The notes beneath the pieces are model-generated. The model saw nothing but the letters and a program-made list of their open reading frames with translations. It did not search any database and was not told where the DNA came from. Made by a program: the position numbers and the translations under genes. Below are positions 1 through 33,059 of a DNA stretch of 64,000 bases, piece after piece; positions within the stretch are counted from its first letter, which is position 1, and the number at the start of each line of letters is the position of its first letter. The DNA comes from Haplodiscus bocki (taxonomy: Eukaryota), in assembly GCA_965655095.1 (NCBI GenBank), contig OZ296656.1, forward strand, positions 71,238,001 to 71,302,000. Reading direction: 5' to 3'.

Positions 1-23
1 TAAACTTCTACAATAACCAAGAA

Positions 24-1157: not shown

Positions 1158-1180
1158 TCTTTTTTCTTTCATGATTCCAA

Positions 1181-4100: not shown

Positions 4101-4432
4101 TCTACCAATTTTTCATGAACTGTTACTTAGACAAAACCATCAAATTCCAACATGGCTGGAGTGACACTCCTTTCTGCTGTTTCTGTGGCTCTGCCGAGGA
4201 AACTTTCCATCACTTGCTTTCCGTATGTCCCAACATTCCTCATTTGAATCTCTTTCCAACAATAGGTCACCCTCAACTGAACTTCCAGCACTCGAGTGAC
4301 ATTTATCCTTTCAAACGACTCATTGCGCTTCTTATTTGTTCATGGAGCAACGACTCGCACAAATTTCAAAAGTATTTCTTAAATTGTGTGAAGCTCAGGA
4401 ACCCTACTATTAGTCTTAATATTAATACATAA
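1181..4432 (+). pseudogene. E1 ORF2 (APE endonuclease + reverse transcriptase + zinc finger), disrupted
   Basis: LNCRGL, LQET, GDFN, IDH, SDH (APE); APGLDG, GVRQGCPLS, YADD (RT); CCFC..ETFHHL..C. Stop at 2087-2089 and frameshifts. Confidence 0.93.
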
Positions 4433-4603
4433 ACACTTGGAACTAAGCTCGGCACGCAACCAAGTTCTTAAGATTCCTTGAATTTCTCTGTCAACTTAGA
4501 TAACTGTAAAGTTTTTTTGATTAATGATTCTTTATTTTGTTGTGTGTGTGTGTTTTCGCCTTGATTGATATGTAGAATACTTTAATGAATAAATTCTTTA
4601 AAA

Positions 4604-6111: not shown

Positions 6112-6290
6112 GCCTAATTGTTGTGATAGCTCTTCTTGCTTGAATCTGAACTCTATTGCTGCTGATATTACAGCCTTTGTTGTGATTAATCATCGCTTGT
6201 AAAAGCGTTGTATTCACGTTACCTTGTACGTTACCTTGTGTAACCTTGTGTATTTACCTTGCCTATTTATTGTTAATATGACATTACATT

Positions 6291-7577: not shown

Positions 7578-10500
7578 TCTTTCCTTTTTGGAGTCGTTAG
7601 ACTTCTTTTCTTTAAATGTAAGAGGGCTCAGTAACCCTGAGCGTCTTACTGAGGTATGTAATATTACAAAAAATCAAAGTAAAAGTAACAAAATAATCAT
7701 AGCATTACAAGAAACTAAACTAATGAAAATGAAGGAGGCACATTATAGGATCATCAAAAAATTTGGTTTTTCGCACGAAATGGTTCCTGCTAATAGCAAT
7801 GCAGGAGGTCTCATGATTCTTTATCCAAAAGATTGTCAAATGACCCCTATGATGAAAAACGAAAACTTGCTGGCTATTGTTCTGAATCTTAATGGGTGTG
7901 AAAACTCAATAATAGCAAATGTATATATTAACCCAAAAGACCACAAAATCGAGAAATTTAGGAAGTCTTTTGAAGAGCTTGATCATACAAATCCTATCAT
8001 AGCAATGGGAGACTTTAATGCGATTGATTACGAAAATATCGTGGAAAATCAAAAACCTCCAAAAACCAATGATATAAGAGTTTTACGTTACAATAAAATC
8101 ACTCAAATTTTTGGTGGTCAAAAGATGTATGACTTAGGCAAAGCCCTAAGCATAACACGACCCACCCATTATGACAAAAGAACAAGAGCCAGCAACCTAA
8201 TTGACTACTTTTTCGGTAACTTTCCCTCCGAAAACCTGGAGATGTCTCTCTATATAACTTCCTTCTCGGATCATAAATGTTTACATCTTACGTTTAATGT
8301 CAACCAAACCTCAATGGGTAAAGGTATCTGGCGTCTGAATGACGAGATCTTAGAGGATAAAACCATGATTACCCAAATATTACACCAATAATTTGAATCC
8401 AATCACTGTAATGCAAAAAACTACGATATTTTCAAATCGAGAATCCGTGACGCTCTTAGAATAATCTGTATCAGAAACATAAAAAAGAAGAAAATGCTAG
8501 AGAAACAACTCATGAAAGAAGTTGAAAACTCAGAGAGACATCTCCAGGCAAAAATTAAAGCAGATCCAAAAGACCTCAAGGATCATGAAGATAAAATTCT
8601 AAATCTTAAAACCTTCCAGCAAAAAGAAGCAACACTTATTGCGAAATCTATTAAAAATCTTTATCTTGATGTTAGTGAAGGAGATCCGAAAACCACAAAA
8701 CTTATGGTGAGGTGTATGCAAAGCAAACAAGAAATCAGAAAAATTATCACAAAGTCAGGCGAAGCCGTAACTGACCAAGATGAAATTGTTGATAAATTTG
8801 CGGAATTTTTTGAGGAATGCTATCAAAAAAATCAAACTTCTAATGAAAAAATCAGCCAGTTATATCTAAATAACTTCTTCCAGAAGAATGAAAAAAAGCT
8901 CAGGAAGTTTGAACTTGGCGAAATATACAAAAACAATGATGATAACCCAATTACAGAATTCGAAGTTGAAAAAGCAATAATGAAACTCAATAGCAGAAGT
9001 GCACCAGGTTCAGATGGCCTCACCTCTGACCTCTATAAAACTCAAAAAGAATTCTTTGTTCCGCTTCTAACTAAGCTTTTCAATGACATATACAAAACCT
9101 CAAATGTTTCTCCTTCATTTGAACAAGCCATCATAAAAGTAATACCAAAAAAACCAAACGTATATGATATCGGCAACTTCCGGCCCATCAGTCTTATAAA
9201 TACGGACCAAAAAATCCTATCACACATTTTAGCCTTCAGATTAAAAAAAGTGCTTGACATATTGATTGGGCCACATCAAACAGCCCACCTTACAAACAGA
9301 AACATTAACCTTTCATTAATGAAACTTTAAACCTTTGCCACTAAAATGTCGAAGAGAGAAGGTATTGTTGCTTTAGATTTCAATAAAGCCTTTGATAAAG
9401 TAGATCGAAACTATATGATGAACCTCATACATCACCTTCCGATTGATTGTCAAACCAAAAACATTATAGAAAAAATGTATGAAAACACGAGAGCACTAGT
9501 AAATGTTGGAGGTGTTTTTTGAGCTCCCTTCAAAACTGAAACTGGTGTCCGCCAAGGTTGCCCAGTCTCAGCTCTAGTGTTTAATCTCGCGATTGAACCT
9601 TTGTTACAAAGAATTCAAAGATCAAAGCTCATTCAATCCTCTCAAAAAACCAAATGTGTTGCGTTTGCAGATGATGTCTCCATTTGCATGAACTTGCACT
9701 CCATTCGCAACCTTAGGACTTCTCTAAATAATTTTGCAAAAATATCTGGTTTGACAGTCAATATAAATAAAAGCAAGGTCCTAACACAAGGGAAAACTTA
9801 TAAACAGGAAAAATGGAAACTTGAGAAAGTATCAAAAACAAGAATCCTCGGGTTAAATATCAACATTGGCAGCAAAATCGATATCCAAACCAAAAACGAT
9901 CTTATCAACACAGCAAGAAAATCATCTCTGTATGTAGGACCTACTGTATCTCTCTACGCTCGTGCAAAAAACATAGAAACGTTCATCCTTCCAAAACCTA
10001 TCTACTCTTTAAGACACTATACAGCGATAAAAACGTTATTAAGAAAACTGAATTGTCAAATGATCAATCAACTGTGGCTAGAGAAGAAACATAACGTCAA
10101 CCAAGAAATTGTCAATACTCCTATCAAAGATGGAGGGATAGGCTTGAAAAACCTCGAAAAGTGTGTATTAACAGCCAAGATAATGAACCTCAAATTATTA
10201 GCATTTAATCCAATGGAAACACACTTCCTCACGTTTCAAAGAAAGCAAAGCTTTCAGTCTCCTGGAAAAATATCTGAAAGACTCCGGCATTGAAATTCTG
10301 GAACTCTCCCAACAAAAACTGACTATTCAATACTTCTTCCAAAATATTGAAATCACGTCATCGACAACTTCAAAAGAACTCTATGAGTTTCTAGTCAAAT
10401 CCATTATCGCGATACCATGTTTTAAACACATCAAATGTCTGCAATGAAAAAGCAAATTTCTCCCAACATAATTTTTGACTTCATAACTCGAATATGGAAA

Positions 10501-10851
10501 AACAGGAGACTCAAATCGTTCGATAAAAACATTTTATATAACTTCCTAATGAACGCCTACCTCGATAAACAAGAGAAATGGTTGAAAAACTTAGTGCCTC
10601 ACCCTCTCTGTTTTGCATGTGAGGAGTACTTTGAAACTTGGCATCACCTAATGTTTGAATGCCCGAAACTAGCGCCAACCATAAAAGCTCTCAATATCAA
10701 ACACTGGAGTGACGTCTTCCAAGACAAAACATACGTAACACCAAAAGTACTAGTAGCAATAATACTATCCTCCTGGACTGAAAGCCCAAGAAAATACCTA
10801 AACTTTTTTCTTAAAAAAACAACGCTATCATATGAGTTACATACCTCGTAG
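7570..10851 (+). pseudogene. E3 ORF2 EN-RT, disrupted
   Basis: LNVRGL, LQET, GDFN, SDH, APGSDG, RPISLINTDQKI, FADD, CFAC..ETWHHL..EC; in-frame stops at 8391 and 9330 plus further lesions. Confidence 0.93.
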
Positions 10852-11006
10852 GTTTTTGAAGTCTATTTTGATATTCTGTTGATAAAATTGATTTATATTT
10901 GATTTCTTTGTGTTTTGATTTGATTTGATTCATTGATTTGTTTATTTTTATTTTTCTTTTCCATGATACTTGTAGATATTTAGTTGTAATAATACATTAT
11001 TCAAAA

Positions 11007-11440
11007 GCCTAATTGTTGTGATATCGCTTACGATTGCTTGCTTGCCTTGCTTGAATCTAGCTGATTGCGCGCATAGATTGGCTGTCTCCTGTTGATTGAG
11101 GATTCGTTACGTCTTGTGGTTCTCATTTCATCACATTTTTTGGGGTGAAAAACATTACTTCGAAATCTTCTTGCTTATTAATTCTTATTCATTGTTACAT
11201 TTCGCTTTGCTTTACATCGCTGCTTGTTCTGAACGGTCAACGCAGTGTCCTCACCCTGTGAATACTGAACTTGATTCAGTTTCAGCACCACAATTCAACA
11301 ATGGAACGACCACAGGCCCTGACCGACAATGTTTCTCTCTGTCCTCCACTGAATATTGGCCCTTCCGAAATGGCACGACAATGTCAAATGAAACTTGAAC
11401 AACAAAGAATACAATTCTACAAGAACCAAGGAACTTCATC
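11007..11440 (+). mobile_element. E4: family A 5' fragment (5' UTR and first codons of ORF1), 3'-truncated
   Basis: Starts with the junction motif; near-identical to 43522-~43946; homology stops near 11440. Confidence 0.88.
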
Positions 11441-14400
11441 ATAAAAAGAATCAAGAAAGAAAAAAGTTAAGCCACCGCCACTCAATTAAACAAAAACACC
11501 TACACACACGTCACACAAAGAACGAAACGTTTATCGTGATAAGCTGCCATTGCCAGAATTTCACAAAGCCGGAAAGGAGCTACAGTTGAACTTTAATGCC
11601 ATACGTAGTGTTCAGAAAAACCAATAGACAGGGTCATTCTGCAAAAAACTCATTTAGGGAATTGACATTGAAATCTTTTCCTGATAACGTACGAAGAGAT
11701 TGCTGCCTCGCAGTAGAAATCTCGAAACTGCTAATAGTGAAAATCGATGCTAGCATTCTGGACAAAAACTTTCGAGAAACCCTTTATTTGGAAAACATTA
11801 CTGAAAGGCAATCAAAGCTTCGAAACTTCAACTAAAACATTTGTTTCAAAAATGAAGTATATCCCTTGCTTCCATCACACCTTCCCAACTGCGACTACTA
11901 GGAAAAAAACTTGATAGATTGCTATAAAGACAATAGTGTTCCAGAAAAACTCTTTTTTTTTCTTCCATTAAAGTAGCTGAAAACAACTGAATTTTGGAAA
12001 TTAAATTGAAAAATATCCGCAAAATGCGTGGAACAGGGCGGACTTGACGAAACTTCCTGAAGTAAATACTATCTATTCCAGAAGACATATGCCAGACAAT
12101 CAAAGATCTTCGGGTAAATCACATTTGAAAACATCATTCTAAAAATAATCTAAATTTCGATGTTTAGATTGAAACACTTGACCAAAACATTAGAGAGTAG
12201 TGGCTCTCCACAGACTTTTGTAACTCCAAGTAGCAAAATGGAAAGTTCAAGATTTCAACCGAAGTAAGTTAATTGAAAAGATTCAGTCTGAAAAAAACTC
12301 AGGTAACCTAAAGAATCCTTCCCAGCGTGTTCAACTTTTATTTCGACTGTTCCTTCTCATTTTGTACATCTACAAGACGGAAAAATGATATTTTCGAGAG
12401 ACCACTGATTTTCACCACCGCAACAACTCTCCCTCCTACGCTGTAAAAAAAAACAAGCAAATTTTAACTAAATTGAGTTGCTAACGTGCAGACAAAACAG
12501 GAACGTCATTCGTACTAAAGTGGCGTTGCCAGTTTAAACACAGAGGCGAATGGGAGCTTGAAAAAAGTGGCAGCAAGACAAGCTACGATTGAACCTCAAT
12601 CCGCTCAATTATGTTCCGGAAAATCGCCTTCAAGAACATCAAATTGATAATTATTCAAAATTCGAGGTTTATATAATTTTTCCACATAATAGGCTTTAGG
12701 CAGACTTCCTCAATGCAAATAGGATGCCTCAGCAAAAGAAAGTTGCAATGGAACCAACAGTGTTCACAGAAAGACATTCAAAAGATTAATTCTGCTAGAA
12801 GGTAATTTGAGAAAACTTCAAATTGAAACGTTCGGATGATGTCCGATAATGGACACCGTATTGAAACAAATAGCATTTTGGGGCCTTCCTCAATTCGAAA
12901 CGCTGCTTCAGTTCCTAGACGGCCAGTAGGGGTACCTAACTAGTCTGCATCGAGGAAAATATCCGTGGGGTTGAATTGCTCCGCTTTGAAGTCTAGATTA
13001 GCCATTTACCCTAAACGCGATTGATGTTTCAATTGTTGCATTGTTATGACCAATATTCAATATTGGGGAGCAGAATTCAACTTTTGTCTGAATCCATCTT
13101 TTGGATGCGGCTGCTAACCATGGGCGCTTGGCTTGACTATTTTTCAAAGACATTTGATGCGGCTTCAGTTCGATCGCGGCCATAAATCAATTAAACACGT
13201 ATCCCATCACTCGTTTCGAACAGACTTTCCAAACTGCCAGGACTTGGTTCAAAATTGGTACATTGCAATTAGGCCAATAGTGTTGAAGAAAGTACCTAAG
13301 AAATCATTCTACTAAAAATATATATCTAAAACACGACCTTTGAATTGAACTATTTTAAGTTTAATGTATGAAAAAGTAGATCTCTTGCTCTCTGCCGTTA
13401 TTCCAAAGTGCCCGTAGCTGTATTAAAAATGTATGCTTGCAATCTGATCAACAGGTAATGAGAAAAATGCCGTCTGAAAAAAATTTGGTCAAATGAATTA
13501 CAAGTCATTCGAGCAGTCCCATCTTCAATTTTGTCTTTTCTCGTCCTATCATCTACTTTCGTGAAAAGGCTTAAAAGACATTTTGTTAGATTTTGAATGC
13601 TTTGACCATCGCGGTGATATTCCAACCATCCTTCTAAGCACTAAGCGGAACAAGCCATCATTAATTAAGGCGAGTTGTTAACGTGCAGATACGAAAATTT
13701 CGATCGTAATAAGCTGCCGTTGCATTAACACTAAGACATTACAGGGCCATTAATTTTGCATATTAATATTTTCGTGACGGTGCTCGTCCAGTGGTTTCAA
13801 CGGCTGTCACCCACTTGTAGGTCCAAGGCGACCAACCCGTTTCTGCACGGAGATCCCAAGGTGCCAGCATTAACGTTGCAAAGCTTGTCATGGTTATGAT
13901 CCAACTAAGACGGTCTTCGCTGCTCAAACCATGGCGTAGTACATACACCTCAAGAGGCCATCTTTATAATTCCAGAAATGAAGCCAGACTAAATGTTAAT
14001 GAATTCGTGCTTATATATACGATGTTTCTGTTCTCTGGATTACTGTTTCCAGACTCTTATCAATGGTATATCGAGAGTTGGTTACGGTCTGGCAACTCGC
14101 CGATTTTCTTCCCAGCGAAAACTCAAAAAAACATGGTCCATTTTCTATCAAGTTTCCGTATTTTAGTACAGCACACAATGAAGCTGGTTCAATTTTGCGG
14201 GCAGGCTGACACGAAATTTATGCAAATGCCAGCTTTGATTCCAATTTATGACAACAATGAACTTCAAACAAAAATGGAAAGTTGAAATATTTTCATCAGA
14301 ATTTCATATTTTCATTGAAACGATCAGAGCGTCATTAAAGAAACTATAGCCGACAACAAGCCGGCAACAGCGCGCAAGGTACAAACCAAAATACTCGAAA

Positions 14401-15978
14401 GACGAGACGACCCTCTGATGTTCTGTGAATGCAGGATACCAATGAGGATTATCACATTTTTTCTCGTAAACTTTTACCTCTAATGGTGTTTCTCAGAACA
14501 TGAGCGTTCAATCGACACCAAAATGGTAAAAAGAGCCACTTCAAACTTTTATCTAATTTTGTTGAGATTTTTCAGAATTCCCATTGACGATGGGTTTTTA
14601 TTCGAATTTGTAGACTATAACAAATGGAAACTTTCTCAAAATTGCATGTTTCAGTCAGTGTGTTGCACCTAATAGCGGAAGAGGCTGGCTAAGCAGAAGC
14701 GACGCGAATTCGTTAATGAAGCGTCTCAAAAGACGCCACTGAGCGGGTGCTCGGGTGTTTTTTTCTGCCTTTCTTGAAAACCTAACTTAAAATCTGTCAA
14801 GACACCAAATAAACCAATTCGATCTTTTTGTGTTGCCCAAAGCCGATAGCACTTTCAGGTGATAAAATATACCATTCTGAATATAGCAAACGCGTTTTAA
14901 GTCGCATTTTTCTCTGTTTCTGCAATAAAAAAGTCATGCCCTCGATAGGTCAATGATACCGCAAAAGTTCCATTCGAGGCGTACCGTTTCGCCCCGACGC
15001 AAATAGAATTCACTGAGAAACGAGGTTATATAAAATTTTTGCTGGAAAACGACAAAGACAAAAGGAGTAGTTTGACGTCTTGGAAAATTTTCACAAGGAA
15101 ATTCTTCATAAACAACTGCAGGACCTTTCAAATGATCAAAAAGCAATTCTGCACGTCTAGGCGAACATTTTGAAGGCTTCCATTTTTTTGGCCAGCACGA
15201 CAAAATTTTCGGGCAGTGTCGGAAATTTTATTGTCTCCAGCCAACTTTTTTGGAAACCAAACTAATGCCTAGAAAAAGGCGCCTTGTTGCTTGTAGCCCA
15301 GTGTGTGTTGAAACATGCAGTGAGCGTGTAGAGACGTTGAAGTCTAGAATAAAGATTTGGCCCAATCGCGGAGAAAAATCTACAGGTTTGAAAATTTTGC
15401 TTATGCTTCATATGATCCAAAATAATAATCTAGCAAAAACACAATTTGCTTGCTACCGGAATACTTTTTGCCTGAGTTGTTATTGAAGAGCTTAAGGAAG
15501 ACGATTGCGATTTCATGTAGCCAAGTAGTTAACGTCTCTCGCTCGGCTGGGGCTCAGTCTCGTGTCACACGTCACCATTTTGTTAGAAATTGTTAATGCA
15601 TTGAAATGTTCAGAAGTGATCGCCGATTCCAGGTAGGAAACTCAGTTCTCCAGTAACTTTTGTCCATGAAATGCTTAAAGAAACACATTATTCTCAAAAC
15701 TAGTACCAAAAATTTGCCATACAACCTATTTAAAGCGTGAAAGAGTACTTTTCAAGCAAATCAGCGATTATTAGAACAGTAGACTCCGGTCGATTGGAAT
15801 CCGAATTACTCGGATATCCGTTTAATTCGCATTTGATTTTGAGCCCATTGTGAAAGAAATCATGTATTAAGATCTGGTTAATTCGTTTGGCCAGTTATTT
15901 GTACAAGGTTATCCAGAGCCAAGCACTACGAATTAGCCGGATTCCAATATAGAAAGGGATATCCAATTTAATTTCGTT

Positions 15979-16016
15979 ATCTGACGGTTCAACTTATATA
16001 AGTTGAGCCGTCAGAT
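15979..16016. repeat. 38-bp near-perfect palindrome ATCTGACGGTTCAACTTAT/ATAAGTTGAGCCGTCAGAT
   Basis: The 19-bp arms are reverse complements with one G-T mismatch. Confidence 0.9.
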
Positions 16017-17342
16017 GAAGAAAATAAATTGAGTCAGGTAGTTCCCATTCTAGTCAGGAAGAAAAGAATGAATAAGAATAATGAATTGAGAGATGAAGAA
16101 AAGAAAATTTTTCAATATAATTTGAACGAATTCAGTTAGACTATTGTGCACTTTCCCATGCGACAGAAAACATATATTGATAAAACTTTCAAATACATTA
16201 AAAGTAAGAATTCATTTGATATAATTGTGACAAGACGAAACATCATGAGGAGGGAATGAAACTCTTTGATGTAGATTTTTCGATTTACAAGCAGATACTA
16301 GTTTTCTTCTCCTACTCACGTGAGACAGCACAACGTACAATAGCAAACTGGTTCCAAATACAATATGACAGCACTTTTGATACCCAAAACAGCTCGAAAA
16401 TGATTCTATGGAAAAAGTAAATAATACGTCGCAGATTACATCAGCCGCTAAATATTTCTTTCGAGTTTACTTTTGGTAGCTTTATGCCGAACGATACCTT
16501 CAACACCGCCGTTCTGACGCCGATATTTAGCGAAGTGGTAACACTCGATGTCAATTACTGATTTTTCAGATGGTGAGCCGCAGTTTCGAACACAATGAGC
16601 AAATACAAAGATGCCGCATTTTCCAAGATTAGGCTAGATGAAGTTATGAAACTCGCTAAAACGCGCATTTCCGCGGAAACAATGATTGAAATTCCGATTA
16701 CATGCACCAAAGTTACGCGCATACACAGAGCAACTATTAGCAACTATGCATAAAACCCTCCGATAAACTTCATTCAAAAGTTAAATTTTAGCCAAGTATT
16801 GCTCGCATTCACATTGAATTTGCAAATATCTCGGAAAATTAAAAAAAAAAAAAACGTTGCGCGATAGATGGGGGTACATCTATCAAATCGTTATCTAATT
16901 ACTTGCACAGCTAGCTGATCAAGGATACGTGCCAGTAGACGGCTACTTTTGACCGTTTCAAAATGATCACTACATCAATTCTCAACCGACGGAATCGCAT
17001 TTTTCGAAAAATCTGTTCCCAGCGATGCCAACCTGCAGGCAAAACCTTTTCCATATCAAACTTTTATGATATCATGATATAACTTTTCATTGCAAACAAT
17101 TTTTCGTAGACATGCTAATCATATCTGAGCCGTCACTAATTTATGCATTTCACGGTGTACTACCATTGCATAGTCCAACTTACTATATGCCCTCCAAAGC
17201 ACTTTTTTTTCTGTTAAGAAATGCATAAAAAACACTAAATAACAAAATGTGTCTTAACTCAGTCTCCAAGTTGTGCAAGCTGTTATTTGTAGCTTAAGTA
17301 CTTTTCAAGGAACGCGATCCAAGCAACTATAGTTCGCTTTTA

Positions 17343-17359
17343 GCCTAATTGTTGTGATA
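17343..17359 (+). other. Conserved unit-start motif GCCTAATTGTTGTGATA (representative copy; also at 4604, 6112, 11007, 23168, 28204, 33195, 38442, 43522, 45288, 50345, 52333, 57673, 59331, 61318)
   Basis: Read directly at all 15 unit starts, always preceded by A. Confidence 0.95.
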
Positions 17360-17588
17360 ACGCCTTTTGATTGTGATAGCTATTACTCGCTTGAATCCTT
17401 GGCTCGCTATTAATTGGCCGTCTCCTGTTGACTCAGGATTCTTGTCAATTTTCACCACATACTATTGTGGTGAAATTATCATTTGGAAATTGGAATTTAT
17501 TCAAGTCTTCATTACCTTGCTTACGACCTGTGCTGGAATTGTGCTACAACTGAATTCTTTTCAGTTCTAGTTCAACCTCTATTACATA

Positions 17589-18955
17589 ATGGAACAACCA
17601 ACGGCCCTGCTCGACAACGTCTCTTCTTCTTCTTTAGCAACCGGCAACCCGACAACGGCTAGACCATGTTATCTAACTCCTGAACAACGCGTACAATTCT
17701 ACAACCAAGCACCATCAATGAACAACCAAGAATCTCCACTGCAAAACCAAGATGCACCACCTCAATCTATCACTAAATACATTGACCAAGCACTTCAGCA
17801 ACCAAGTTACTCTGGAATTGCAACTGATAACCAAGCACCTCAACAACCAAGTTACTCTGGAATTGCATGCAACAACATTCCTCAACCAAGAACCATGAAC
17901 ATTCTCAAACTCAAAATTATCCCACCATTCAACAAAGACCACTTCGCAACCAAGGAAACCTTCGAAACAGCCTCCAACCAATGTATCGCTGCTATTCTAC
18001 GTCAATTCTCGCCGCAACTAAGAACGAAACTAACTATCTCAAAAACCTTCACCATGGTCGGAACACGCAGACTTCATACTTTCCACATTGTTGCTCCAAT
18101 CGAGGCCACTGAAGTATTTTCTCGACTCCAGTCAAGTGGAATTGAGATGCTAGGAAGAACAGTCATTCCCCAGGGTGACTCTTTTGAACGCTACATCCCA
18201 GGAATCTATCCGAAACACACTCCGGTACGAATCCTGCAACTTCCCTCACTGTGCCACGAACAAGAGATCCACAATATTCTTGATTTACCAGAATCCACTG
18301 AAATTACGTCTCTACGCCACAATACCGATGTGATCGACGGCATGAATTTCTACAATGGGCGTGCATCAGCCATGGTTCGGGTAGTTTCAAAAGAACATGA
18401 GCAGATGCTACGTGAATGGTCGATCCGAAGTCATGAAAATGGGACACATGAATGGAACGGCATTCCAATTTATGCATTTATACCCTCACTTCATCACTGT
18501 CAACATTGTAAGGTTCACCGTCGGCCCTTCCACGGCCATGACATTGCCTGGTGTCGATATGCAAAGGCCGATGAGCAACTAAGAACAATTCCTACTCCCA
18601 ACAATGGCAACCAAGAGATCTCTGCTCAACCAAGTAACAACGTCTCAACTTCTGAACCCACTGCTCAAACTGATGAAACTAATGTATCGAATGTGACTCC
18701 TGACGAAACCTCTGATGAAACTGACAACCAAGAAGATACTGAAACAAACAGCGAAGAAGATGACTCACAACGTTCATGGCAGACTGCACCCACACACTCA
18801 ACCAAGACTTTTCTGCAACTAAGACCCAATCGCAACCATCTCCGTTTGACACAACCAAGAGGAAAGCAGAACATAACAAAACACGACTCTTCACGGCGCA
18901 CAATCTGACACTCCAGATGCCTGCTCCAAAGAAGAAAAAGAAACCAACGAAATGA
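17589..18955 (+). pseudogene. E5 ORF1, frameshifted near the C-terminus
   Basis: 439-aa ORF matching E2 ORF1; the basic tail KKKKKPTK-stop lies in another frame ending at 18955. Confidence 0.8.
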
Positions 18956-18982
18956 TCTTAGTCCTTAGTTTTCATTTATTTT

Positions 18983-21900
18983 ATGATGAATGTTTTCTCC
19001 TTAAATTGTCGAGGTCTGAAAGACCATAGACGTCTCCACACCATTGTGAATAACTGTATACGAAAACTTTCAGACATCGACAATCTTTGCATGTGCTTGC
19101 AAGAAACTAAGCTCTCTAACCTAAGTAATAACCATCTAAAGATCCTGGAGCACTATCATCTTTCCTATATTCTATATCCTGCTGATGGTCAATCAGGAGG
19201 ACTCCTCACGATTTTTCCAAAAAAAATTTACAGTGCTAGGGACACATAAGTCACCTAACACAATAAGTATCCACTTTTCTCAACATACTTTCACATTAAC
19301 AAACATCTACATCCATTAACAAACATCTACATCAAACCGACTGACTACAAACTTCAACAATTTTTATCAGACATTCTTGCTATTGAGCAATTTCATTGTG
19401 ACACTCACATTCTATGTGGTGACTTCAATGCGTTACCATCAGCTGACTGTACTTCCAGCTGTCATGTTGCAAATAATGATATCCGTCTTCTTAGATATCA
19501 TCGTATCCTTGACATTCTTCATAATCTTCATGTGGTACGTGTTGAACCACACTCACCATCGACGAAATTCACGCACTTTGACAAGAGGACTGGCTCTGCT
19601 AGTCAGATTGATCATTTTTTCACTAATCAACCTCACTATGTATATACTACAACAAAAATTTCCTTTTCCGATCATGCTCTTTCTCTAGAAGTTTCAGATC
19701 TAACTATGACAGGTTCCAGCTACCGGAAACTTAATGACAATGTATTGCTCCATCATGACTATATCACAGGCATCATCTTCGACACTCTACACACCTCTCA
19801 CAATTCAAATAACCTCACGTTACACCATTATGACCTTGTTAAAACCAAAATGAGAGATCGTCTTCGTGCTTTATGCATCTTCTTGCATAAGCAGGCACTT
19901 CATGAAGCGAGATACTTGAATGCCGAAATTTCAAAGCTTGAACATCACATCTACAATAATGATGCTGACCCTGTTCTGATTAAACAGTTGTCCACTTTAA
20001 ACTCGCAACTCATGAATTATCAAAGTATGAAAGCCAAAAAAGACTTTAAACAAATCAAACAATATTTTACAGACTGTCATCATGGCGACTCACATTCTGT
20101 TAAGAAACTCATCTGCTCCCGTAGACAAAAAACTAACATCGAATCAATTGACTTACCAGATGGTTCCTCCACATTTAACATTGATGACATCTTCGGTGAG
20201 TTCCACAACCATTTCCCTCAGCGTTTCACACAGCCACTCTACACAACACCAGACACAATTTCTCACTTCTCAAACATTGAGGACATTTTACAACCATTTC
20301 TAACAACACACTGGAATGCAATACAGGATAATAATGCTCAAAATACTAATCATTCACAGGTAACAGAACAAGAGGTTGAAGAGGCTATTAAAAAACTGAA
20401 TTCAAATAGTGCTCCAGGATTAGATGGTTTAACATCTAACTTTTATAAAGCAAATGCAATTTTTTTTTGTTCCGTACTTAACTACTATATTTAACTTAAT
20501 AATTATACATAATTGGGTTCTTGAATCCTTCACAAGAACTGTAATTAAATTAATTCCGAAAAAACCGGTGTCACGTACGGTTGAAGACTATCGTCCGATT
20601 AGCCTTATTAATACTGAGCAAAAAATTCTGTCTCATCTTCTTGCCAATCGCCTAAAAAACTCACTGACGTCCCTCATTGGCTCACACCAAACTGCATATC
20701 TTCCTCAACGCTCAATTCACTCCTCGCTTACCCAAGTTAATCTAAACTTAGAACAACTCACTGATGAGGATTGTCTTGTTGCCTGTGATTTTACCGACTA
20801 ACATCATGGAGACTCACACTCGGTCAAAAAACTCATTTGCTCACGTCGGCAAAAATCCAACATAGAATCTCTTGACTTGCCAGATGGCTCTACCACATTC
20901 AACATTGACAACATGTTCTATCAATTTCACCACCACTTTTCTCAACGTTTCACACAACCGATCCATGCCACATCAGACCCAACTTCTCACCTCTCTAACA
21001 TTGAGAACCTTTTACAACCTTTTCTCAGCACACATTTGAACGCAATACAAGCTAACATAGCTCAACATACCCATAACTCGCATGTAACAGAACAGGAAGT
21101 GGAAGAGGCAATTAAAAAACTTAACTCCGGTAGTGCTCCAGGATTAGATGGTTTAACATCTAATTTTTACAAAGCTCATGCAAACTTTTTTACTCCATAC
21201 TTAACTATCATTTTTAACTTAATGATCTCACATAACTGGGTTCCTGAAGCCTTCTCAGGAACGGTGATTAAGTTAATACCGAAAAAACCGGTTTCGCGTA
21301 CGGTCGAAGACTATCGTCCGATTACTCTTATTAACACTGATAGAAGATTCTATCTCATCTTCTTGCGAATCGCCTGAAAAAGTCCCTGACCACACTCATT
21401 GGTCCCCACCAAACTGCATACCTTCCTCAACGGTCAATTCATTCTTCGCTTACTCAAGTAAATCTAAACTTAGAATACCTCACAGAGGAGGATTGTCTAG
21501 TTGCTTGTGACTTTAGCAAAGCTTTTGATAAACTCGACCGAACCTATCTTTTTGCTCTCCTACAGCAAATTGGCCTCCATCCGTCCACTCTTGGTCTCAT
21601 CAAACTCATGTATCACCACACTGATGCATTTCTTGATATTAACGGATCGCTATCTCCAGTTATTAACATAACTAGTGGTATCCGTCAAGGATGTCCCCTT
21701 TCTTCGCTCCTCTTTATTCTTGGCCTCGAACCTTTCCTGTTTCATCTCCAACATAACACCTCCATCCAATCATCTAGTCCTTTCAAAATCATAGCTTATG
21801 CAGATGACATTACATGTTGTCTTAAAATCAACAGCCTCCAATATCTCTTCAATACTATCATTTTCTCGTCTGTCACTAACCTGTATCTGAATCATCAGAA

Positions 21901-22978
21901 AACTGAGATCTTATGTTCTGGCTCACTCCCAAGTGGCTTCCTATCAGTTCCCACTGTCCAAATCTTAGGTGTTCAGTTTTCCATAAATAACTCAGCGATT
22001 CAACTGAATTCCGCAATCTTGCAGGCGAACAAATCACGGCTTTTCTGTAATCCATATAATACGTTTCTCGCTCGCGCCAAAAACGTTGAGACTTTTGTTA
22101 TGCAAAAACTCATTCATCAAGTTCGCCATAAATATGTATTGAAGACGCAGCTAGAAAAGCTTGACAATATCTTTGTCGATTCCGTCTGGTTAGGACGTAA
22201 ACATAACATGAAGAAAACTATCCTCCAGAAACCGTGGGCTTCCATGGGAATTGGTCTTAAAAACTTTACGCAGGTTATCACTGCGGCCAAAACTATTGAC
22301 TTTAAGAATTTTCTCTACTCGAATCCTACCAGCAATCAATACCGTCTCTTTCGTAATTCTAAACTTTTTTCCAACATGAGACTCTTACTGCGAACCTTCA
22401 ACTGTACCGTCAGTTTAGATAATACTTCTCAAGTACTTCTCCGCAAATCATCTCAAATCTTAGTTCTTACTCCATTAACGCGAACTCGTGAAGTCTATCG
22501 TTTTCTTAGTTCCACAAATACGCATGATTCTCTCTTGCGTCTAACCCAACTGGCGTCTCGCCTCAATTACCCACCCGATCAAATTTTTATGTTTTTGCGG
22601 CGCCTATGGAAGCACAAATCATATGCAGCGTTTGAGAAAATCTATCTCTATCAATTTTTCATGAACTGTTACATGGATAAAACTGTTAAATTCGAACATG
22701 GATGGACTGATACTCCTTTCTGTTGTTTCTGTGGCTCTGCCAACGAAACCTTCTACCATCTTTTATCGGAATGTCCGAATATTCCTCATCTAAACTTCTT
22801 TCCAACCACAGATCATCCGCAACTCAACTTCCATCTCCCCAACGATTATTACCCCTTTAAACGGCTCATCGCTCTCCTCATTTGTTCGTGGAGTAATGAC
22901 TCGCACAAATTTTCAAAATATTTCATTAACTGTGTGAAACTCAGGAACCCCACTATAAGTTTACATACTAATCTTTGA
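18983..22978 (+). pseudogene. E5 ORF2 EN-RT, disrupted and partly duplicated
   Basis: MNVFSLNCRGL start; APGLDG and RP(I/S).LINT occur twice; GIRQGCPLS, YADD, C-terminal CCFC finger. Confidence 0.92.
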
Positions 22979-23167
22979 CAATAGTAATCTAAGTTTTAAT
23001 CATAACTACGTTTGAATTATAACTAAGCTTTGAGCATGATCAAGTTTGAACTGCCACTATGATACCTTTGATATACATTTCTGGATTTCTGATTTCTGAT
23101 AGATAACTAATCATTTGTCTCACTAATCATTTGTATTAAGATACTTGAATGAATTAATTCTTTAAAA

Positions 23168-26100
23168 GCCTAATTGTTGTGATATTGCTAATCTCTTACT
23201 GAGTGTTACTTTTGTTTATCACATTTCTTTGCAAGACTTTGCATTTCTTGCAAAATTTTTAGCGAGTGTGAACTCATTTAATCTGTTACGAATTCTTTGA
23301 AATTCATTACGACTAACCAAAATTTTCTCAAAAATTCAAAAAAGCATTTTCAAAGTTACAACCAGCACCGAGCCTCAAACGTCATCAATAACGACAGAAG
23401 CGACGGAGATATTAACATGAACGAACAAAATTCAAACACCTGCCTCACAATTGTGGAAAGTTTGAATAGTCCACCTCAAACCGTTTCTAACAACAAAATG
23501 GATCAGCAAAACAACCCAGCTTCAAACAATCCAAATTCCAACGTGACCCGACAGCACCTTGGATCTGATTTGCTTCCTCGCAATGAACAAAGTTCAGCTC
23601 CCAGTGCAGGTTCCTCACGTGACGAACATGTTGAACATTTAGTACAAACTACAAACTCGAATGAGCAACAACCAATGAGCTTCAGTCAAACAGTACAGGC
23701 CAACACCCATAACCAAGTACGAACACAAAGAATTATAAGAATGAAAGTGGTCCCTCCATTCCGAAGAGAGCACTTTCAGAATGCCAATCTTCTTCAAACA
23801 GATATTGAGAATGCAATGCGGGAAATCCTGAACATCTTCCAACCAATTCACAGAAGAATGGTAACAATTGCGAGGACAAATATCCCCCAGCCAGGGCAAC
23901 GACATTTGCAAATTTTAATGGTGACAGCCCCAATAGACGCGGAGAACGAAGTTCAAGAGCAAAGCTAACAGGAATCAAAGTAATGGGAAAAACCGTCTTT
24001 CCAACGGGCGACGAATACTGGAGATTTACCAACAGCGAGTACCCCAAAAGAGCGATGATACGCATAACAAATTTACCGATTTTACTGGGAACAGATGAAC
24101 TGGAGGAGCTCCTTCAGCTACCAGAAGATACAGAATATAACGGCGTACCCGAAAGGGAAACAACGAGGACAGATCTGGGTCCGATATATACTGGTCGAGC
24201 TAGGATCCCAATAGAAATAAACTCAAAAGATCATGAGGATGCACTGTGCAAATGGTCAAAATGGAGAAACTCAGAAGACGGACTAATGTTATGGAACGAA
24301 GTTCCAATTTATATGTCAATCCCGAGACTTCACAGGTGTACATTGTGTGAAGCCGAAAACCGCCCCCAATTTATTGGTCATGATGCCCAATGGTGTCGGA
24401 TTATTCGACGAGTTCAAAATACAGAACGTGTTGATGAGACGGAACCCCAAACCTCGGAGACTCTAGCGGAAGAAGTTTCAAACGTGGTGGTGCCCCAGAA
24501 TCAGATATCAAACAAACCCTCAGCTGAAGAACCCGGAAAATCCTGTTCAAACTCGAGTGAACCCAATGAAGAAGATGATGAAATTTCTGATACTTCCTCC
24601 TCTGAATACGAAACGAATGACAACCGGAACGCCCAGAAAAATGACCAAGAACCGTGGCAACAAGCAGGTAACAACAAAAAGAGGAAAACGCACAAAAAGA
24701 CGACGTCCACACAGTCCTCAACATCCAACAATCTACCTACAAAAAGAAGTATGAACACGTAAACTAACTCAAACCCTAATGTTTAACTTTGCGTCTTCGA
24801 AGTCGGTAGACTTTTTTTCAATTAATGTGAGAGGGCTCAATAATGCTGAGCGTCTCACAGAGGTATGTAACATTACAAAAAACCAAAGTAAAAGTAACAA
24901 AATAATCATAGCACTACAAGAAACAAAACTAATGAAAATGAAGGAGGAACATAATAGGATGATCAAAAAATTTGGTTTTTCTCATGAAATGGTCCCTGCT
25001 AATGGTAATGCAGGAGGTCTCATGATTCTCTATCCCAAAAATTACAAAATGACCCCAATGATGAAAAACGAAAACTTGCTGGCTATTGTTTTAAATCTTA
25101 ATGGGTGTGAAAACTCAATAATAGCAAATGTATATATAAACCCAAAAGACCACAAAATCGATAAGTTTAAAAATTCTTTCGAAGAACTCGATCATGCAAA
25201 ACCTATCATTGCAACGGGGGATTTTAATGCAATTGATTACCAAAATATCTTCGACAGTCAAAAACTTCCAAAAACCAATGATATAAGAGTTTTACGGTAC
25301 AACAAACTCAATCAAATTTTTGGCGGAAGAAAAATGTATGACCTATGCAAAACCTTGAGCGAAAACCCAACCCACCCATTATGACCAAAAGGACAAGAGC
25401 CAGCAACCGAATTGACTATATTTTTGGTAATTTGCCCTCCGAAAACCTTGAGATGTTTCTCTATACAACTTCCTTCTCTGATCATAAATGTATACATCTA
25501 GCATATCATGTCAATTATAACTCCATAGGCAAAGGTTCCTGGCGTTTGAATGACGAAATCTTAGAAGACAAAACCATGATAACCCAAACATTACACCAAT
25601 CGTTTGAACCCAATCATTGTAATGCAAAAAACTATGATATTTTCAAATCAAGAATACGAGACTCCCTTAGACTAATCTGTATCAGAAACGTAAAGAAAAA
25701 GAAAATGCTAGAAAGACAGTTAAAGAAGGCAGTTAAAAACTCAGAGAAACATCTTCAGGCGAAAAAAGAAGTAAATCCGAATGACCTCAAGGATCATGAA
25801 AACAAAATTCTGGATCTCAAAACCTTTCAGCATAAAGAAGCTGCACTTATTGCAAAATCAATCAAAAATTTTTATCTTGATGTCAGTGAAGGCGATCCAA
25901 AAATAACAAAAAGTCTAGTGAGGTGTCTGCAAACCAAACAGGAGGTCAGAAAAATTATCACAAAGTCGGGTGAAGCCGTAACTGATCAAAATGAAATTGT
26001 CGACAAGTTTGAATTTTTTGAAGAATGTTATCAAAAAAACCAAACCTCTAATGAAAAAATGAGCCAAATATATCTAAATGACTTTTTCCAGAAGAATGAA

Positions 26101-28203
26101 AAAAAGCTCAGAAGGTTTGAACTCGGCGAAATATACAAAAACAATGATGATAACCCCATTACAGAAATCGAAGTTGAAAGAGCAATAATGAAACTCAACA
26201 GAAGTGCACCAGGCTCAGATGGCCTCACCTCTGACCTTTACAAAACCCAAAAAGAATTCTTTGTTCCGCTATTAACTAAGCCTTTCAACGACATATATGA
26301 AAAGTCATATGTTCCTCCTTCCTTTGAACAAGCCATCATAAAAGTAAAACCAAAAAAACCAAACGTATATGATATTGACAACTTCCGGCCAATCAGTCTT
26401 ATAAATACGGATCAAAAAATCTTATCACACATTATAGCCTTCAGATTAAAGAAAGTGCTTGATGTATTGATTGGGCCACATCAAACAGCCCACCTTACAA
26501 ACAGAAACATTAACATTTCATTATTGAAACTTCAAACTTTTGCCTCTGAACTGTCAAAGAGAGACGGTATTGTTGCCTTAGATTTCAATAAAGCATTTGA
26601 TAAAGTAGATCGAAAATATATGATGGAGCTCATACGTCGCCTCCCGATTGACTGTCAAACCAAAAACATAATACAAAAAATGTATGAAAACACGAGTGCA
26701 TTAGTAAATGTAGGTGTTTTTTCGGCACCCTTCAAAACTGAAACAGGAATCCGCCAAGGTTGTCCAATGTCAGCTCTGGTGTTTAACCTTGCCATTGAAC
26801 CATTGTTACAAAGACTTCAAAGATCAAAACTCATCAAATCATCACAAGAAACCAAATCTATTGCCTTTGCAGATGATATCTCCATTTGCATGAACTTGCA
26901 CTCCATTCGAAACCTCATGACTTCTCCGAATAATTTTGCAAAAATCTCCAGTTTGACAGTCAATATCAACGAAAGCAAGGTCCTAACACAAGGGAAAACC
27001 TATAAACAGGAAAAATGGAAACTTGAGAAAGTATCAAAAGCAAAAATCCTCGGGTTAAATAATAACATTGGTGGCAAAATCGATGCCGAGACCAAAAGCG
27101 ATCTAATCAACACAGCAAGAAAAGCATCTCTTTATGTAGGGCCTACTGTATCTCTTTATGCTCGTGCAAAAAACATAGACATTTATCCTTCCAAAACTTA
27201 TATACTTTCTCAGGCACTATACAGGGATAAAAACATTATTGAGGAAACTCAATTGTCAAATGATCAATCAACTATGGCTAGAGAAGAAACATAACGTGAA
27301 CCAAGAAATTGTTAATACTCCAATCGAAGATGGAGGGATAGGCTTGAAAAACATCGAGAAATGTGTATTAACAGCCAAAATAATGAACCTCAAATTATTA
27401 GCCTTTAATCCAATGGAAAAACACTTCCTTACAAATTTCAAACAAAGCAAAGCTTTCAGTCTCCTGGAGAAAGATCTAAAAGATTCCGGTATTGAAATTC
27501 TGGAACTCTCCGAACAAAAACTGAATATTCAATACTTCTTCCAAAACATTGAAATCACAACATTGACAACCTCAAGAGAACATTATGAGTTCCTTGTAAA
27601 ATCCCTTATCACGGTACCATGTTTTAAACACATCAACATGTCAGCAATGGAATTCCAAATATATCCCAACATAATTTTTGGCTTCATAACTCGAATATGG
27701 AAAAACAGGAGACTGAAATCGTTCGATAAAAACATTTTATATAACTTCCTAATGAACGACTACCTCGATAAACAAGAGAAATGGTTGAAAAACTTAGTGC
27801 CTCACCCTCTCTGTTTTGCATGTGAGGAGTCATTTGAAACTTGGCATCACCTAATGTTTGAATGCCCGAAACTAGCGCCAACCATAAAAGCTCTCAATAT
27901 CAAACACTGGAGTGACGTCTTCCAAGATAAAACATACGTAACACCAAAAGTACTAGTAGCAATAATACTATCCTCCTGGACTGAAAGCCCAGGAAACTAC
28001 CTAAACTTTTTTCTTAAAAAAACAACGCTATCATATGAGTTACATACCTCGTAGGTTTTTGAAGTCTATTTTCATATTCGTTTGATAAAATTGATTTATA
28101 TTTGATTTCTTTGTGTTTTGATTTGATTTGATTCATTGATTTGTTTGATTTTATTTTCCATGATACTTGTAAATATTTAGTTGTAATAATACATTCTTCA
28201 AAA
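23168..28203 (+). mobile_element. E6: family B (subfamily B2) full-length element
   Basis: Motif at 23168; ORF1 23417-24762 (one frameshift near 23955); ORF2 24779-28054 (frameshifts); ends AATACATTCTTCAAAA. Confidence 0.93.
24779..28054 (+). pseudogene. E6 ORF2 EN-RT, disrupted
   Basis: INVRGL, LQET, GDFN, RIDY, SDH, LDFNKAFD, GIRQGCPMS, FADD spread across three ORF fragments. Confidence 0.92.
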
Positions 28204-28482
28204 GCCTAATTGTTGTGATATCGCTAACGATAGAGATAGCTCTTTGTGCTTGAATCACTAGCTTATCGTGACCATATTGGACAGGCTTCGCTCTGTTGGT
28301 CACCATTTCATCACTTTTTTGTGGTGCAAATCATTACTTCGAAATCGAAATCTTCTTGGTTATTCATTCTTCATTGTATTATTTCGCTTTGATTTACTTC
28401 GCTGCTTGTTCTGCAAGGCCAACGCAGTGTTCTCACGCTGTGAAGACTGAACTTGCTTCAGTGTTCATCTTCAAACGTGACC

Positions 28483-29802: not shown

Positions 29803-29832
29803 TCTTAGTTCTTATTTTTCTTTTATTTTGTA

Positions 29833-32800: not shown

Positions 32801-33059
32801 TTGCTGTTTCTGCGGCTCTGCTGAAGAAACTTTCCACCATCTCTTATCAGAATGTCCGAACATTCCTTATCTGAACTTCTTTCCAGCCACAGGTCATCCG
32901 CAGCTCAACTTCCAGCTCCTTAATGATTTTTATCCCTTTAAACGGCTCATCGCTCTTCTTATTTGTTCGTGGAGCAGCGACTCGCACAAATTTCAAAAAT
33001 ATTTCATAAACTGTGTGAAACTCAGGAACCCAACTATTAGTCTAAATATTAACCTCTGA
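29833..33059 (+). pseudogene. E7 ORF2 EN-RT, disrupted
   Basis: EN and RT motifs (GDFN, SDH, CDFSKAFD, YADD) split by frameshifts near 30850 and 31990. Confidence 0.92.

What the first reader, a model, noticed from the sequence alone, without database searches (positions are those of the whole stretch)
17343..17359. The 17-nt unit-start motif looks like the 5' part of a trans-splicing spliced leader
Seen: GCCTAATTGTTGTGATA starts every unit while the 5' UTRs diverge right after it. From memory, unverified: the SL described for the acoel Symsagittifera roscoffensis starts with this sequence and continues roughly AACTTATTAAATAG; I did not find that continuation in the window. Known: SL-gene-targeting retrotransposons (NeSL in nematodes, CRE/SLACS/CZAR in trypanosomatids) use a restriction-like endonuclease, not APE. 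Inference: these are either APE-type elements inserting at about +17 of the SL exon (17-18-nt TSD, transcribed from the SL promoter) or elements carrying an SL-mimic 5' end. Because only part of the SL is present, simple trans-splicing does not explain it.
Basis: partly seen in the sequence, partly recalled or inferred. Interest (0 to 1): 0.9.

Follow-up and report, generated by a model that had tools for sequence, protein, structure and literature searches.

The report
LINEs that insert into spliced-leader genes
The 17-base motif is the first 17 bases of this acoel worm's spliced-leader (SL) exon, duplicated each time a jumping gene (an L1-like LINE with an AP-type endonuclease) inserts at the start of an SL RNA gene; this target was known only for LINEs with a different endonuclease.

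Summary
GCCTAATTGTTGTGATA occurs 12 times in the window (10 exact, all + strand; 0.02 expected). Three more degenerate copies bring this to 15 unit starts.

It equals nt 1-17 of the published Symsagittifera roscoffensis SL. The genome holds 624 uninterrupted SL genes (native upstream end, full SL, GTAAGT donor), mostly in an SL-5S rRNA array 1.17 Mb downstream on the same contig.

In that array, interrupted units read: SL promoter, SL 1-17, element, ...TTCTTTAAAA, complete SL 1-31, intron. There are 25 such 5' junctions and 21 such 3' junctions. The motif is therefore a 17-18 bp target-site duplication.

The elements encode APE plus RT, colinear with human L1 ORF2p. The window is a degenerate pile-up headed by a diverged SL promoter (16921-17342), built by repeated insertion and by 9-kb and 52-kb duplications.

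At least three deeply diverged lineages in the window share the site. The same junction occurs in four other assemblies, including an ocean metagenome. One lineage in the clade targets U2 snRNA instead.

Simple trans-splicing is excluded. Transcription from the SL promoter is inferred, not shown.

A follow-up agent of this scan reached the same reading on the adjacent window (s1-364264). I rate this a new variant of a known kind.

The parts
17343..17359 (+). SL exon nt 1-17, directly downstream of an SL-gene upstream region: the 5' target-site copy at the head of an array segment.
   Evidence: Exact match. Identical to nt 1-17 of the published SL.
16921..17342 (+). Diverged SL RNA gene upstream (promoter) region, ending ...CGCTTTTA just before SL +1.
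   Evidence: 74% identical over about 450 bp to the region upstream of active SL genes. A 100% identical second copy lies at C9:71,202,487; all other genomic matches are the active type at 77%.
17360..23167 (+). Lineage A element (about 5.8 kb) with degraded ORF1 and ORF2; ends ...AATTCTTTAAAA.
   Evidence: RVT_1 and zf-RVT hits in 21608-22978. Unit comparison. 30-44% aa identity to lineage D in the RT region.
1..4603 (+). Lineage A element, cut at its 5' end by the window start.
   Evidence: 78-83% identical to the 17343 unit; conserved 3' end at 4593-4603.
4604..6111 (+). Degenerate 17-mer (GCCTAACTGTTGATA) plus a 1.5-kb 5' fragment of a lineage A element, abutting the next 17-mer.
   Evidence: 99% identical to 17343-18851; sequence shown.
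6112..11006 (+). Exact 17-mer plus a lineage B element (4.9 kb).
11007..11440 (+). Exact 17-mer plus a 434-bp 5' fragment of a lineage A-type element. Its end is the breakpoint of the 52-kb segmental duplication.
   Evidence: 97% identical to the start of the 43522 unit. From 11441 the sequence follows L064:3010 onward at 94.5%.
11441..16920 (+). Non-element DNA upstream of the variant SL promoter; no ORF over 131 aa and no Rfam match.
23168..28203 (+). Exact 17-mer plus a lineage B element (5.0 kb; RT ORF 25345-27294).
28204..33194 (+). Exact 17-mer plus a lineage A element (5.0 kb).
33195..38441 (+). Exact 17-mer, then two 5'-shortened relic copies (33217-33227 and 33230-33242, both ending at SL nt 17), then a lineage C element (RT ORF 35780-37861).
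   Evidence: 39% aa identity to lineage D.
38442..43521 (+). Degenerate 17-mer (2-nt deletion) plus a lineage B element.
   Evidence: 97% identical to the 23168 unit; junction shown.
43522..45287 (+). Exact 17-mer plus a 1.77-kb internally deleted lineage A derivative (5' UTR, ORF1 and 3' end only).
45288..50344 (+). 17-mer with 1 mismatch plus a lineage B-like element (RT ORF 47449-49107).
50345..52332 (+). Exact 17-mer plus a 1.99-kb non-autonomous unit.
52333..57672 (+). Exact 17-mer plus a lineage D element with an uninterrupted 1090-aa APE-RT ORF2 (54234-57506).
   Evidence: Pfam RVT_1 6e-30; Exo_endo_phos_2 and Exo_endo_phos just under their cut-offs. Aligns to human L1 ORF2p residues 10-879, E 2e-54.
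57673..59330 (+). Degenerate 17-mer (GCCTTGTTGTGATA) plus a 1.66-kb non-autonomous unit.
59331..61317 (+). 17-mer with 2 mismatches plus a copy of the 1.99-kb unit; start of the second copy of a 9-kb tandem duplication.
   Evidence: 100% identical to 50350-52332.
61318..64000 (+). Exact 17-mer plus the start of a second copy of the lineage D element.
   Evidence: 100% identical to 52333-55015; continues in L061.

Best explanation
The 17-mer is nt 1-17 of the SL exon. It is the target-site duplication left by a clade of L1-like, APE-encoding non-LTR retrotransposons that insert specifically at the 5' end of SL RNA genes.

Shown by sequence:
- The bottom strand is opened at the SL transcription start (-1/+1, or -2/-1; the A there is ambiguous).
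- The element 3' end (...TTCTTTAAAA, a fixed short A-run) is joined there.
- The top strand is opened after SL nt 17 (nt 15-16 in two distant lineages), at the foot of SL stem-loop I.
- The product is: promoter, SL1-17, element, A-run, SL1-31, GT intron.

Inferred:
- The upstream copy leaves the element directly behind the SL promoter. Element RNA would then start at SL +1 and carry the 17-nt leader.
- The leader's complement on the cDNA would pair with the target to give exact 5' junctions.
- Each insertion recreates the target, so repeated hits plus unequal crossing-over build head-to-tail arrays such as this window.
For: - Identity with the SL: the published SL matches. Of the 30 sampled 17-mer places elsewhere in the genome, 26 continue with the rest of the SL or a point-mutated copy of it.
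- SL genes: 624 uninterrupted units carry the native upstream end, full SL and GTAAGT. They sit in an SL-5S rRNA repeat on the same contig.
- Paired junctions: there are 25 'native upstream + SL1-17 + non-SL' junctions and 21 'AAAA + full SL + GT' junctions. They lie 0.8, 1.6 or 5.5 kb apart on the same strand in the SL arrays.
- Two insertions read end to end: L071 and L072 have flanks identical to an uninterrupted unit.
- In the window, an SL-upstream homolog sits directly before 17343. The same holds at the array head, C9:71,202,909.
- Element type: APE plus RT, colinear with L1 ORF2p from residue 12.
- Recurrence: lineages with 30-58% aa identity share the junction in the window. The same architecture occurs in other assemblies and a Tara Oceans contig.
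- Relic partial 17-mers, all ending at nt 17, lie behind a full copy at 33195 and in lineage A and B 5' UTRs. This fits a leader on the RNA plus a target-supplied copy.
- Fold: SL nt 1-16 are unpaired and nt 17-31 lie in the 5' arm of stem-loop I, which pairs with the intron.
Against: - No RNA evidence. The only public runs are contigs of unrecorded kind and show no starts. Transcription from the SL promoter and a 17-nt leader on the RNA are therefore inference.
- I found no 5'-truncated insertion flanked by the 17-mer, which would prove the copy is target-derived. A blunt insertion at -1/+1 by an RNA that brings its own 17-mer would leave the same DNA.
- The 3' end of this window's own array was not reached. 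Units continue at least 78 kb beyond the window end, to C9:71,380,000 (L062:8039 and element matches to the end of L063), with no SL remainder there.
- The window's SL promoter copy is only 74% identical to the active type and may be dead.
- The main SL genes of this genome lack a canonical Sm site at the position where a related assembly has AAUUUUUG.
Confidence: 0.9

Rival explanations
1. There is no target-site duplication. The elements insert bluntly just upstream of SL +1, and the 17-mer at their 5' end is part of the element RNA (an SL-mimic leader carried from copy to copy).
For: A 3'-truncated unit is fused exactly to base 1 of the next 17-mer at 6112, as expected if the leader travels with the RNA and the RT jumps templates. 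One unit inside the array starts with the full 31-nt SL (L062:660). The final DNA is the same as under the duplication model.
Against: Tandem relics at 33195 (a complete 17-mer, a few extra bases, then 5'-shortened copies all ending at nt 17) need two sources, target and RNA. Distant lineages leave 15-16 nt instead of 17 at the 5' side while sharing the 3' junction, as expected from different top-strand nicks. Staggered nicks with duplication are the norm for APE LINEs (established knowledge).
Confidence: 0.08
2. The 17-mer comes from SL trans-splicing of element RNAs, possibly by a variant SL or a cryptic donor, followed by retrotransposition.
For: Most sampled dispersed copies elsewhere in the genome begin with the full 31-nt SL or a point-mutated copy, so trans-spliced RNAs are retrotransposed here. 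One such unit lies in the array (L062:660).
Against: All 673 SL-plus-GT sites place the donor after nt 31, and there is no GT after nt 17. The window has no SL nt 18-31 at all. The 17-mer is preceded by SL promoter sequence at 5' junctions and followed by the whole SL gene at 3' junctions. Only 98 genomic 17-mers are followed by a non-A base; they cluster in SL arrays or are point mutants of the full SL.
Confidence: 0.01
3. The array is a telomere-type head-to-tail retrotransposon array (HeT-A/TART-like) and the motif is a conserved element terminus unrelated to SL genes.
For: The units are uniformly oriented head to tail, with ORF1-only partner units.
Against: The array is internal, at 71 Mb of a 92.8-Mb contig. 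Array heads carry SL upstream sequence. The same elements sit singly in SL-5S units.
Confidence: 0.01

Closest known systems
SLACS / CZAR / CRE1-2 (CRE clade, trypanosomatids) and NeSL-1 (nematodes)
   Same: They insert site-specifically into the SL exon of tandem SL RNA genes, a multicopy 'safe' target (PMC4640811). From memory: SLACS lies a few nt into the SL exon, is flanked by a duplication, and is transcribed from the interrupted gene's SL promoter.
   Different: Those elements use a restriction-like endonuclease placed after the RT. The elements here have an N-terminal APE and are colinear with L1 ORF2p. The host is an acoel, the site is the transcription start, and the duplication is 17-18 bp.
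Keno and other target-specific Tx1-clade LINEs (APE type)
   Same: They are APE-encoding L1-group LINEs that target multicopy small-RNA genes (PMC4494074). A sister lineage of the present clade targets U2 snRNA genes.
   Different: The listed Tx1 targets (a DNA transposon, U2, microsatellites) do not include SL. Keno's U2 flank starts at nt 39 (PMC4640811), whereas the acoel U2 lineage sits at nt 18/19 with a 7-bp duplication. Placement in the Tx1 clade could not be tested.
R1 and R2 in rDNA
   Same: Same lifestyle: a minority of tandem-array units is occupied (about 4% here). They depend on host-gene transcription, and co-transcribed target sequence is thought to aid exact joining (PMC4494074 discussion).
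   Different: The target is an rRNA gene read by Pol I. R2 has a restriction-like endonuclease. Long head-to-tail pile-ups are not typical.
Retrocopies of SL trans-spliced RNAs (for example dinoflagellate relic SLs; from memory)
   Same: SL sequence lies at the 5' end of retroposed copies. This genome has hundreds.
   Different: Those carry the whole SL up to the donor site and are dispersed. The window's units carry only nt 1-17 and sit in SL genes.

Membership tests
APE-type non-LTR retrotransposon, L1 group | N-terminal apurinic/apyrimidinic-like endonuclease domain | tested here: met
   Exo_endo_phos_2 (27.3 bits, cut-off 27.4) and Exo_endo_phos (23.8 bits, cut-off 24.5) in residues 14-236. 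The alignment to human L1 ORF2p starts at residue 12, E 2e-54. Relatives carry PF03372.
APE-type non-LTR retrotransposon, L1 group | Reverse transcriptase domain downstream of the endonuclease, with a separate upstream ORF1 | tested here: met
   RVT_1, E 6e-30, residues 530-768. ORF1 lies at 53147-54241 with no Pfam family.
APE-type non-LTR retrotransposon, L1 group | Marks of target-primed reverse transcription: an A-run at the 3' end and a target-site duplication | tested here: met
   L071 and L072 end in ...TTCTTTAAAA and are flanked by SL nt 1-17 on both sides.
Tx1 clade (Keno, Mutsu, Kibi and others) | Placement inside the Tx1 clade in an RT phylogeny with named reference elements | not testable with these tools
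   No named Tx1, L1 or R1 reference sequences could be obtained. The nearest relatives outside the acoel clade are unnamed and share 22-27% identity.
Keno (U2-specific Tx1) | Insertion in U2 snRNA genes with the 3' flank starting at U2 nt 39 | tested here: not met
   The window elements sit in SL genes. The related U2 lineage has its 3' flank at U2 nt 19.
SL-specific retrotransposons of the CRE and NeSL clades | Site-specific insertion in the SL exon | tested here: met
SL-specific retrotransposons of the CRE and NeSL clades | Restriction-like (PD-(D/E)xK) endonuclease C-terminal to the RT, and no APE | tested here: not met
   An APE is present at the N-terminus. The C-terminal part matches L1 ORF2p and zf-RVT, not a restriction-like domain.
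Retrocopy of an SL trans-spliced RNA | The complete SL (nt 1-31) joined directly to the downstream exon | tested here: not met
   SL nt 18-31 are absent from the window. The feature is met elsewhere in the genome and once in the array outside the window (L062:660).
SL RNA gene (the target) | SL exon followed by a GT donor, a stem-loop pairing exon with intron, and an Sm site | tested here: inconclusive
   The donor GTAAGT and stem-loops I and II are present. A canonical Sm site (AAUUUUUG) is present in a related assembly. In this genome's units it is replaced by an 8-nt insertion.

The most novel reading that the evidence does not exclude
By landing exactly at the SL transcription start and keeping SL nt 1-17, these LINEs turn an snRNA-type SL promoter into a driver of protein-coding RNAs. 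These RNAs would begin with the same unpaired 5' leader as trans-spliced host mRNAs. Under this reading the leader is a functional SL mimic, used in cap or leader-dependent translation or export, or in escape from silencing, and is not merely a footprint. SL targeting would be ancestral to an acoel-wide clade that later switched to U2 through the shared CTTTT|RGC(C)TAA motif.
Probability: 0.2. Interest if true: 0.75.

Novelty: new variant of a known kind. Interest (0 to 1): 0.62.

Why it matters
SL RNA genes were known as retrotransposon targets only for the early-branching elements with a restriction-like endonuclease (CRE clade, NeSL). Here an L1-like APE clade has reached the same niche independently, in Xenacoelomorpha.

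The cleavage geometry is very precise: the transcription start on one strand and the foot of SL stem-loop I on the other. This gives a natural system for studying how an APE endonuclease acquires sequence specificity. It also offers a view of how targets switch, from SL to U2, through a shared short motif. A third question it opens is whether an snRNA-type promoter can drive a LINE.

There are practical consequences too. About 4% of SL units are interrupted, and large pile-ups exist beside the SL-5S cluster. This matters for annotating acoel genomes and for SL-based transcript mapping, because the 17-mer and the hundreds of SL-bearing retrocopies will attract SL-containing reads.

Tried and rejected
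I worked with pieces of 10 kb or less, so the array was not walked end to end and its 3' terminus was not found.
- RNA evidence: the four runs that hold the sequence are Logan contigs of unrecorded kind. They show no molecule starts. They only show that many different sequences abut SL +1 and SL nt 31.
- Rfam found no ribozyme or other RNA family in the window.
- The bacterial promoter scan is irrelevant to a eukaryote.
- The 17-mer-plus-non-A singletons on other chromosomes were tested as possible off-target insertions. Six of the eight sampled are point-mutated full SLs or shortened SL remnants of retrocopies, one (L079) has an unidentified continuation, and only L082 is a dispersed element copy.
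- The 0.8-kb inserts, tested as possible 5'-truncated copies, are internal-deletion derivatives of the 1.6-kb unit.
- The ESM Atlas gave only generic RVT_1, Exo_endo_phos and zf-RVT clusters.
- Four literature searches found no APE-type SL-targeting LINE. The library lacks most subscription journals and Repbase, so this does not prove novelty.
- Trans-splicing, telomere-type array and chance were considered and rejected (see rival explanations).

Full report
**Observation.** GCCTAATTGTTGTGATA lies at 17343-17359. With up to two mismatches it occurs 12 times in the window, always on the + strand. Ten copies are exact. Shuffles give 0.02 expected. Three more unit starts carry indel-degenerate copies, at 4604, 38442 and 57673, which makes 15 unit starts. 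Thirteen follow a conserved element 3' end (ATTCTTYAAAA or a one-base variant). The sequence after position 17 differs between units. The rest of the SL is absent from the window.

**What the motif is.** The published S. roscoffensis spliced leader is the 17-mer followed by AACTTATTAAATAG(A) (PMC9911081). The window's genome is 1.5 Gb, and the window sits at C9:71,238,001-71,302,000. It holds 1455 exact 17-mers. Of the 30 sampled places on another chromosome, 26 continue with SL nt 18-31 or a point-mutated copy of them, and then with unrelated sequences. These are retrocopies of trans-spliced RNAs.

The full SL followed by GT occurs 673 times. Of these, 624 carry the native upstream end GCTTTTA and the donor GTAAGT. 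They form a tandem array starting 1.17 Mb downstream of the window on the same strand. Each unit also holds a 5S rRNA gene about 245 bp behind the SL start. In the predicted fold, SL nt 17-31 lie in the 5' arm of stem-loop I, which pairs with the intron, and nt 1-16 are unpaired.

**The decisive structures.** Only 98 genomic 17-mers are followed by a non-A base. They cluster as follows:
- this array (C9 71.20-71.36 Mb);
- the flanks of the SL array;
- one array on C10;
- small SL-array contigs.

Twenty-five of them are directly preceded by the native SL upstream end. Separately, 21 sites read AAAA, then the complete SL, then GT. The two sets pair up on the same strand at 0.8, 1.6 or 5.5 kb.

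Two insertions were read through. Upstream sequence identical to an uninterrupted unit is followed by SL 1-17, the element...AATAAATTCTTTAAAA, SL 1-31 and GTAAGT with the intron. SL nt 1-17 is therefore duplicated on both sides of each insertion. The duplication is 18 bp if the A at -1 is counted. The bottom-strand break is at the transcription start and the top-strand break is after nt 17.

**The window itself.**
- 16921-17342 is 74% identical to the SL upstream region and runs straight into the 17-mer at 17343.
- The same variant promoter, 100% identical, heads the array at C9:71,202,909. A third promoter-headed junction lies at 71,325,596.
- From 11441 the window repeats the DNA upstream of that head at 94.5%. 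This marks a 52-kb segmental duplication.
- 50345-59330 is repeated from 59331 on, a 9-kb tandem duplication.

The pile-up therefore grew by repeated insertion and by unequal crossing-over. Its far end was not reached. Units continue through the two 10-kb pieces read at C9:71,360,001-71,380,000, 58-78 kb beyond the window end, without an SL remainder.

**The elements.** The intact ORF2 (54234-57506, 1090 aa) has RVT_1 and borderline APE hits. It aligns with human L1 ORF2p from residue 12 to 872, E 2e-54. No restriction-like endonuclease is present. The window holds at least three deeply diverged autonomous lineages: A, C and B/D. Lineages A and C share 30-44% aa identity with D, and B shares about 57% with D. 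It also holds short ORF1-only or deleted units.

Outside the window, relatives with 34-57% identity to the window ORF2 lie in SL-5S repeats of other assemblies with the same 3' junction. Their 5' copies are 15, 16 or 17 nt long. One lies in an SL-U2 repeat with a different intron. Two short contigs, one from a Tara Oceans metagenome, end in the same junction.

In an ORF2 tree the acoel sequences form one clade (100/100). SL-targeting lineages fall on both sides of its deepest split. A U2-targeting lineage is nested beside an SL-targeting one (95/81). That U2 lineage leaves U2 nt 1-25 upstream and nt 19 onward downstream, a 7-bp duplication. The two targets share CTTTT|RGC(C)TAA at the bottom-strand break. 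This is read directly from the sequences.

**Mechanism.**
- Shown: the insertion site, the duplication, the enzyme type, and recurrence across lineages and data sets.
- Inferred: the element behind the promoter is transcribed from SL +1, so its RNA starts with the 17-nt leader. The leader's cDNA complement pairs with the target overhang and gives exact 5' joins.

Three observations support a leader on the RNA:
- At 33195 a complete 17-mer is followed by TTGCG, then SL nt 7-17, then TT, then SL nt 4-17.
- Older relics lie inside the 5' UTRs of lineages A and B.
- At 6112 a truncated unit is fused to base 1 of the next 17-mer.

The fixed A4 and the conserved last ~16 nt suggest that the RT recognises a specific 3' end rather than a poly(A) tail. 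No RNA reads were available to test any of this.

**Comparison and novelty.** SL exons are a listed target of non-LTR elements (PMC4640811). From memory, the known SL-specific families (CRE1/2, SLACS, CZAR, NeSL-1) all carry the restriction-like endonuclease. The known APE-type target-specific clades, Tx1 and R1, have other targets (PMC4494074). Four literature searches found no APE-type SL-specific LINE.

This is therefore a known lifestyle reached by a different kind of LINE. Its geometry is unusually exact and its clade history points to SL as the ancestral target. Another agent of this scan reached the same reading for the adjacent window (s1-364264). My evidence was gathered independently.

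**Verdict.** Confidence is 0.9. The class is a new variant of a known kind, and interest is about 0.6.

Noticed in passing
G000 C1, loci L001-L030 (e.g. L004, L007, L012, L018, L028, L030): Hundreds of dispersed copies begin with the full 31-nt SL (or a point-mutated copy) followed by varied sequences. One recurrent family starts CTTCGGCTGTTTAATAAGTCAACTTCAG. These look like retrotransposed, SL trans-spliced RNAs, including other retrotransposon families. This is a separate phenomenon from the 17-mer units.
   Followed up: partly
L040:1501-1640 versus L073:1772-1885: This genome's main SL-5S units have an 8-nt insertion (CCCAAT-GCACCGAA-) where a related assembly has the canonical Sm site CCCAATTTTTGAA. 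No canonical-Sm variant was found in this genome. The nearest candidate is AAAAUUUUC about 30 nt further on.
   Followed up: partly
L074 (ENA ERZ25074608), 1-1653 and 2718-7552: A U2 snRNA array holds two unrelated elements. One has a CCHC plus PD..D/ExK-like C-terminus and its 3' flank starts at U2 nt 39, the known Utopia/Keno site. The other is an APE element of the present clade, inserted at U2 nt 18/19 with a 7-bp duplication.
   Followed up: partly
SL gene -6..+6 (L040:1495-1506) and U2 nt 14-25 (L074:8637-8648): The two targets of the clade resemble each other at the nick: CTTTT|AGCCTAA in the SL gene and CTTTT|GGCTAAG in U2. This suggests an easy route for target switching and favours the -2/-1 nick (18-bp duplication) in SL genes.
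   Followed up: no
L062:660-2418 (C9:71,360,660-71,362,418): One unit inside the array begins with the complete 31-nt SL, not followed by GT, and ends with the usual element 3' end. It looks like an element RNA that was trans-spliced at an internal acceptor and then inserted at the same target.
   Followed up: partly
window 6095-6135: A lineage A unit breaks off after 1509 bp and is joined exactly to base 1 of the next 17-mer with no A-run. This is compatible with an RT template jump between two leader-bearing RNAs.
   Followed up: partly
G000 C10:82,994,670-83,096,541 (- strand): Thirty-one 17-mer-plus-C junctions lie in this 102-kb stretch. Most neighbours are 2.0-3.7 kb apart, with three larger gaps of 5.6-27 kb. 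This is probably a tandem array of the short non-autonomous unit. No 'AAAA + SL + GT' end was listed on that contig.
   Followed up: no
window 50345-52332, 57673-59330, 59331-61317; L071; L084; L085: Short units (0.8-2.0 kb) carry only an ORF1-like gene with a CX2C...HX4C motif and share the last 60-190 bp with autonomous elements. They occupy many SL units and are presumably mobilised in trans.
   Followed up: partly
L094 (ERR1726951, Tara Oceans marine metagenome): A 4.3-kb ocean-metagenome contig encodes an ORF2 69% identical to the window's. It ends in ...AAATAAATTCTTTAAAA followed by the SL and GTAAGT, so acoel DNA with this element is present in plankton samples.
   Followed up: no
L092:6667 (ENA ERZ25074608): A clade member with 45% identity ends ...AATAAATTTTTAAA and is followed by AGCCTTGTCTTATCAAGG, which is not SL or U2. 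This may be another target or an off-target copy.
   Followed up: no
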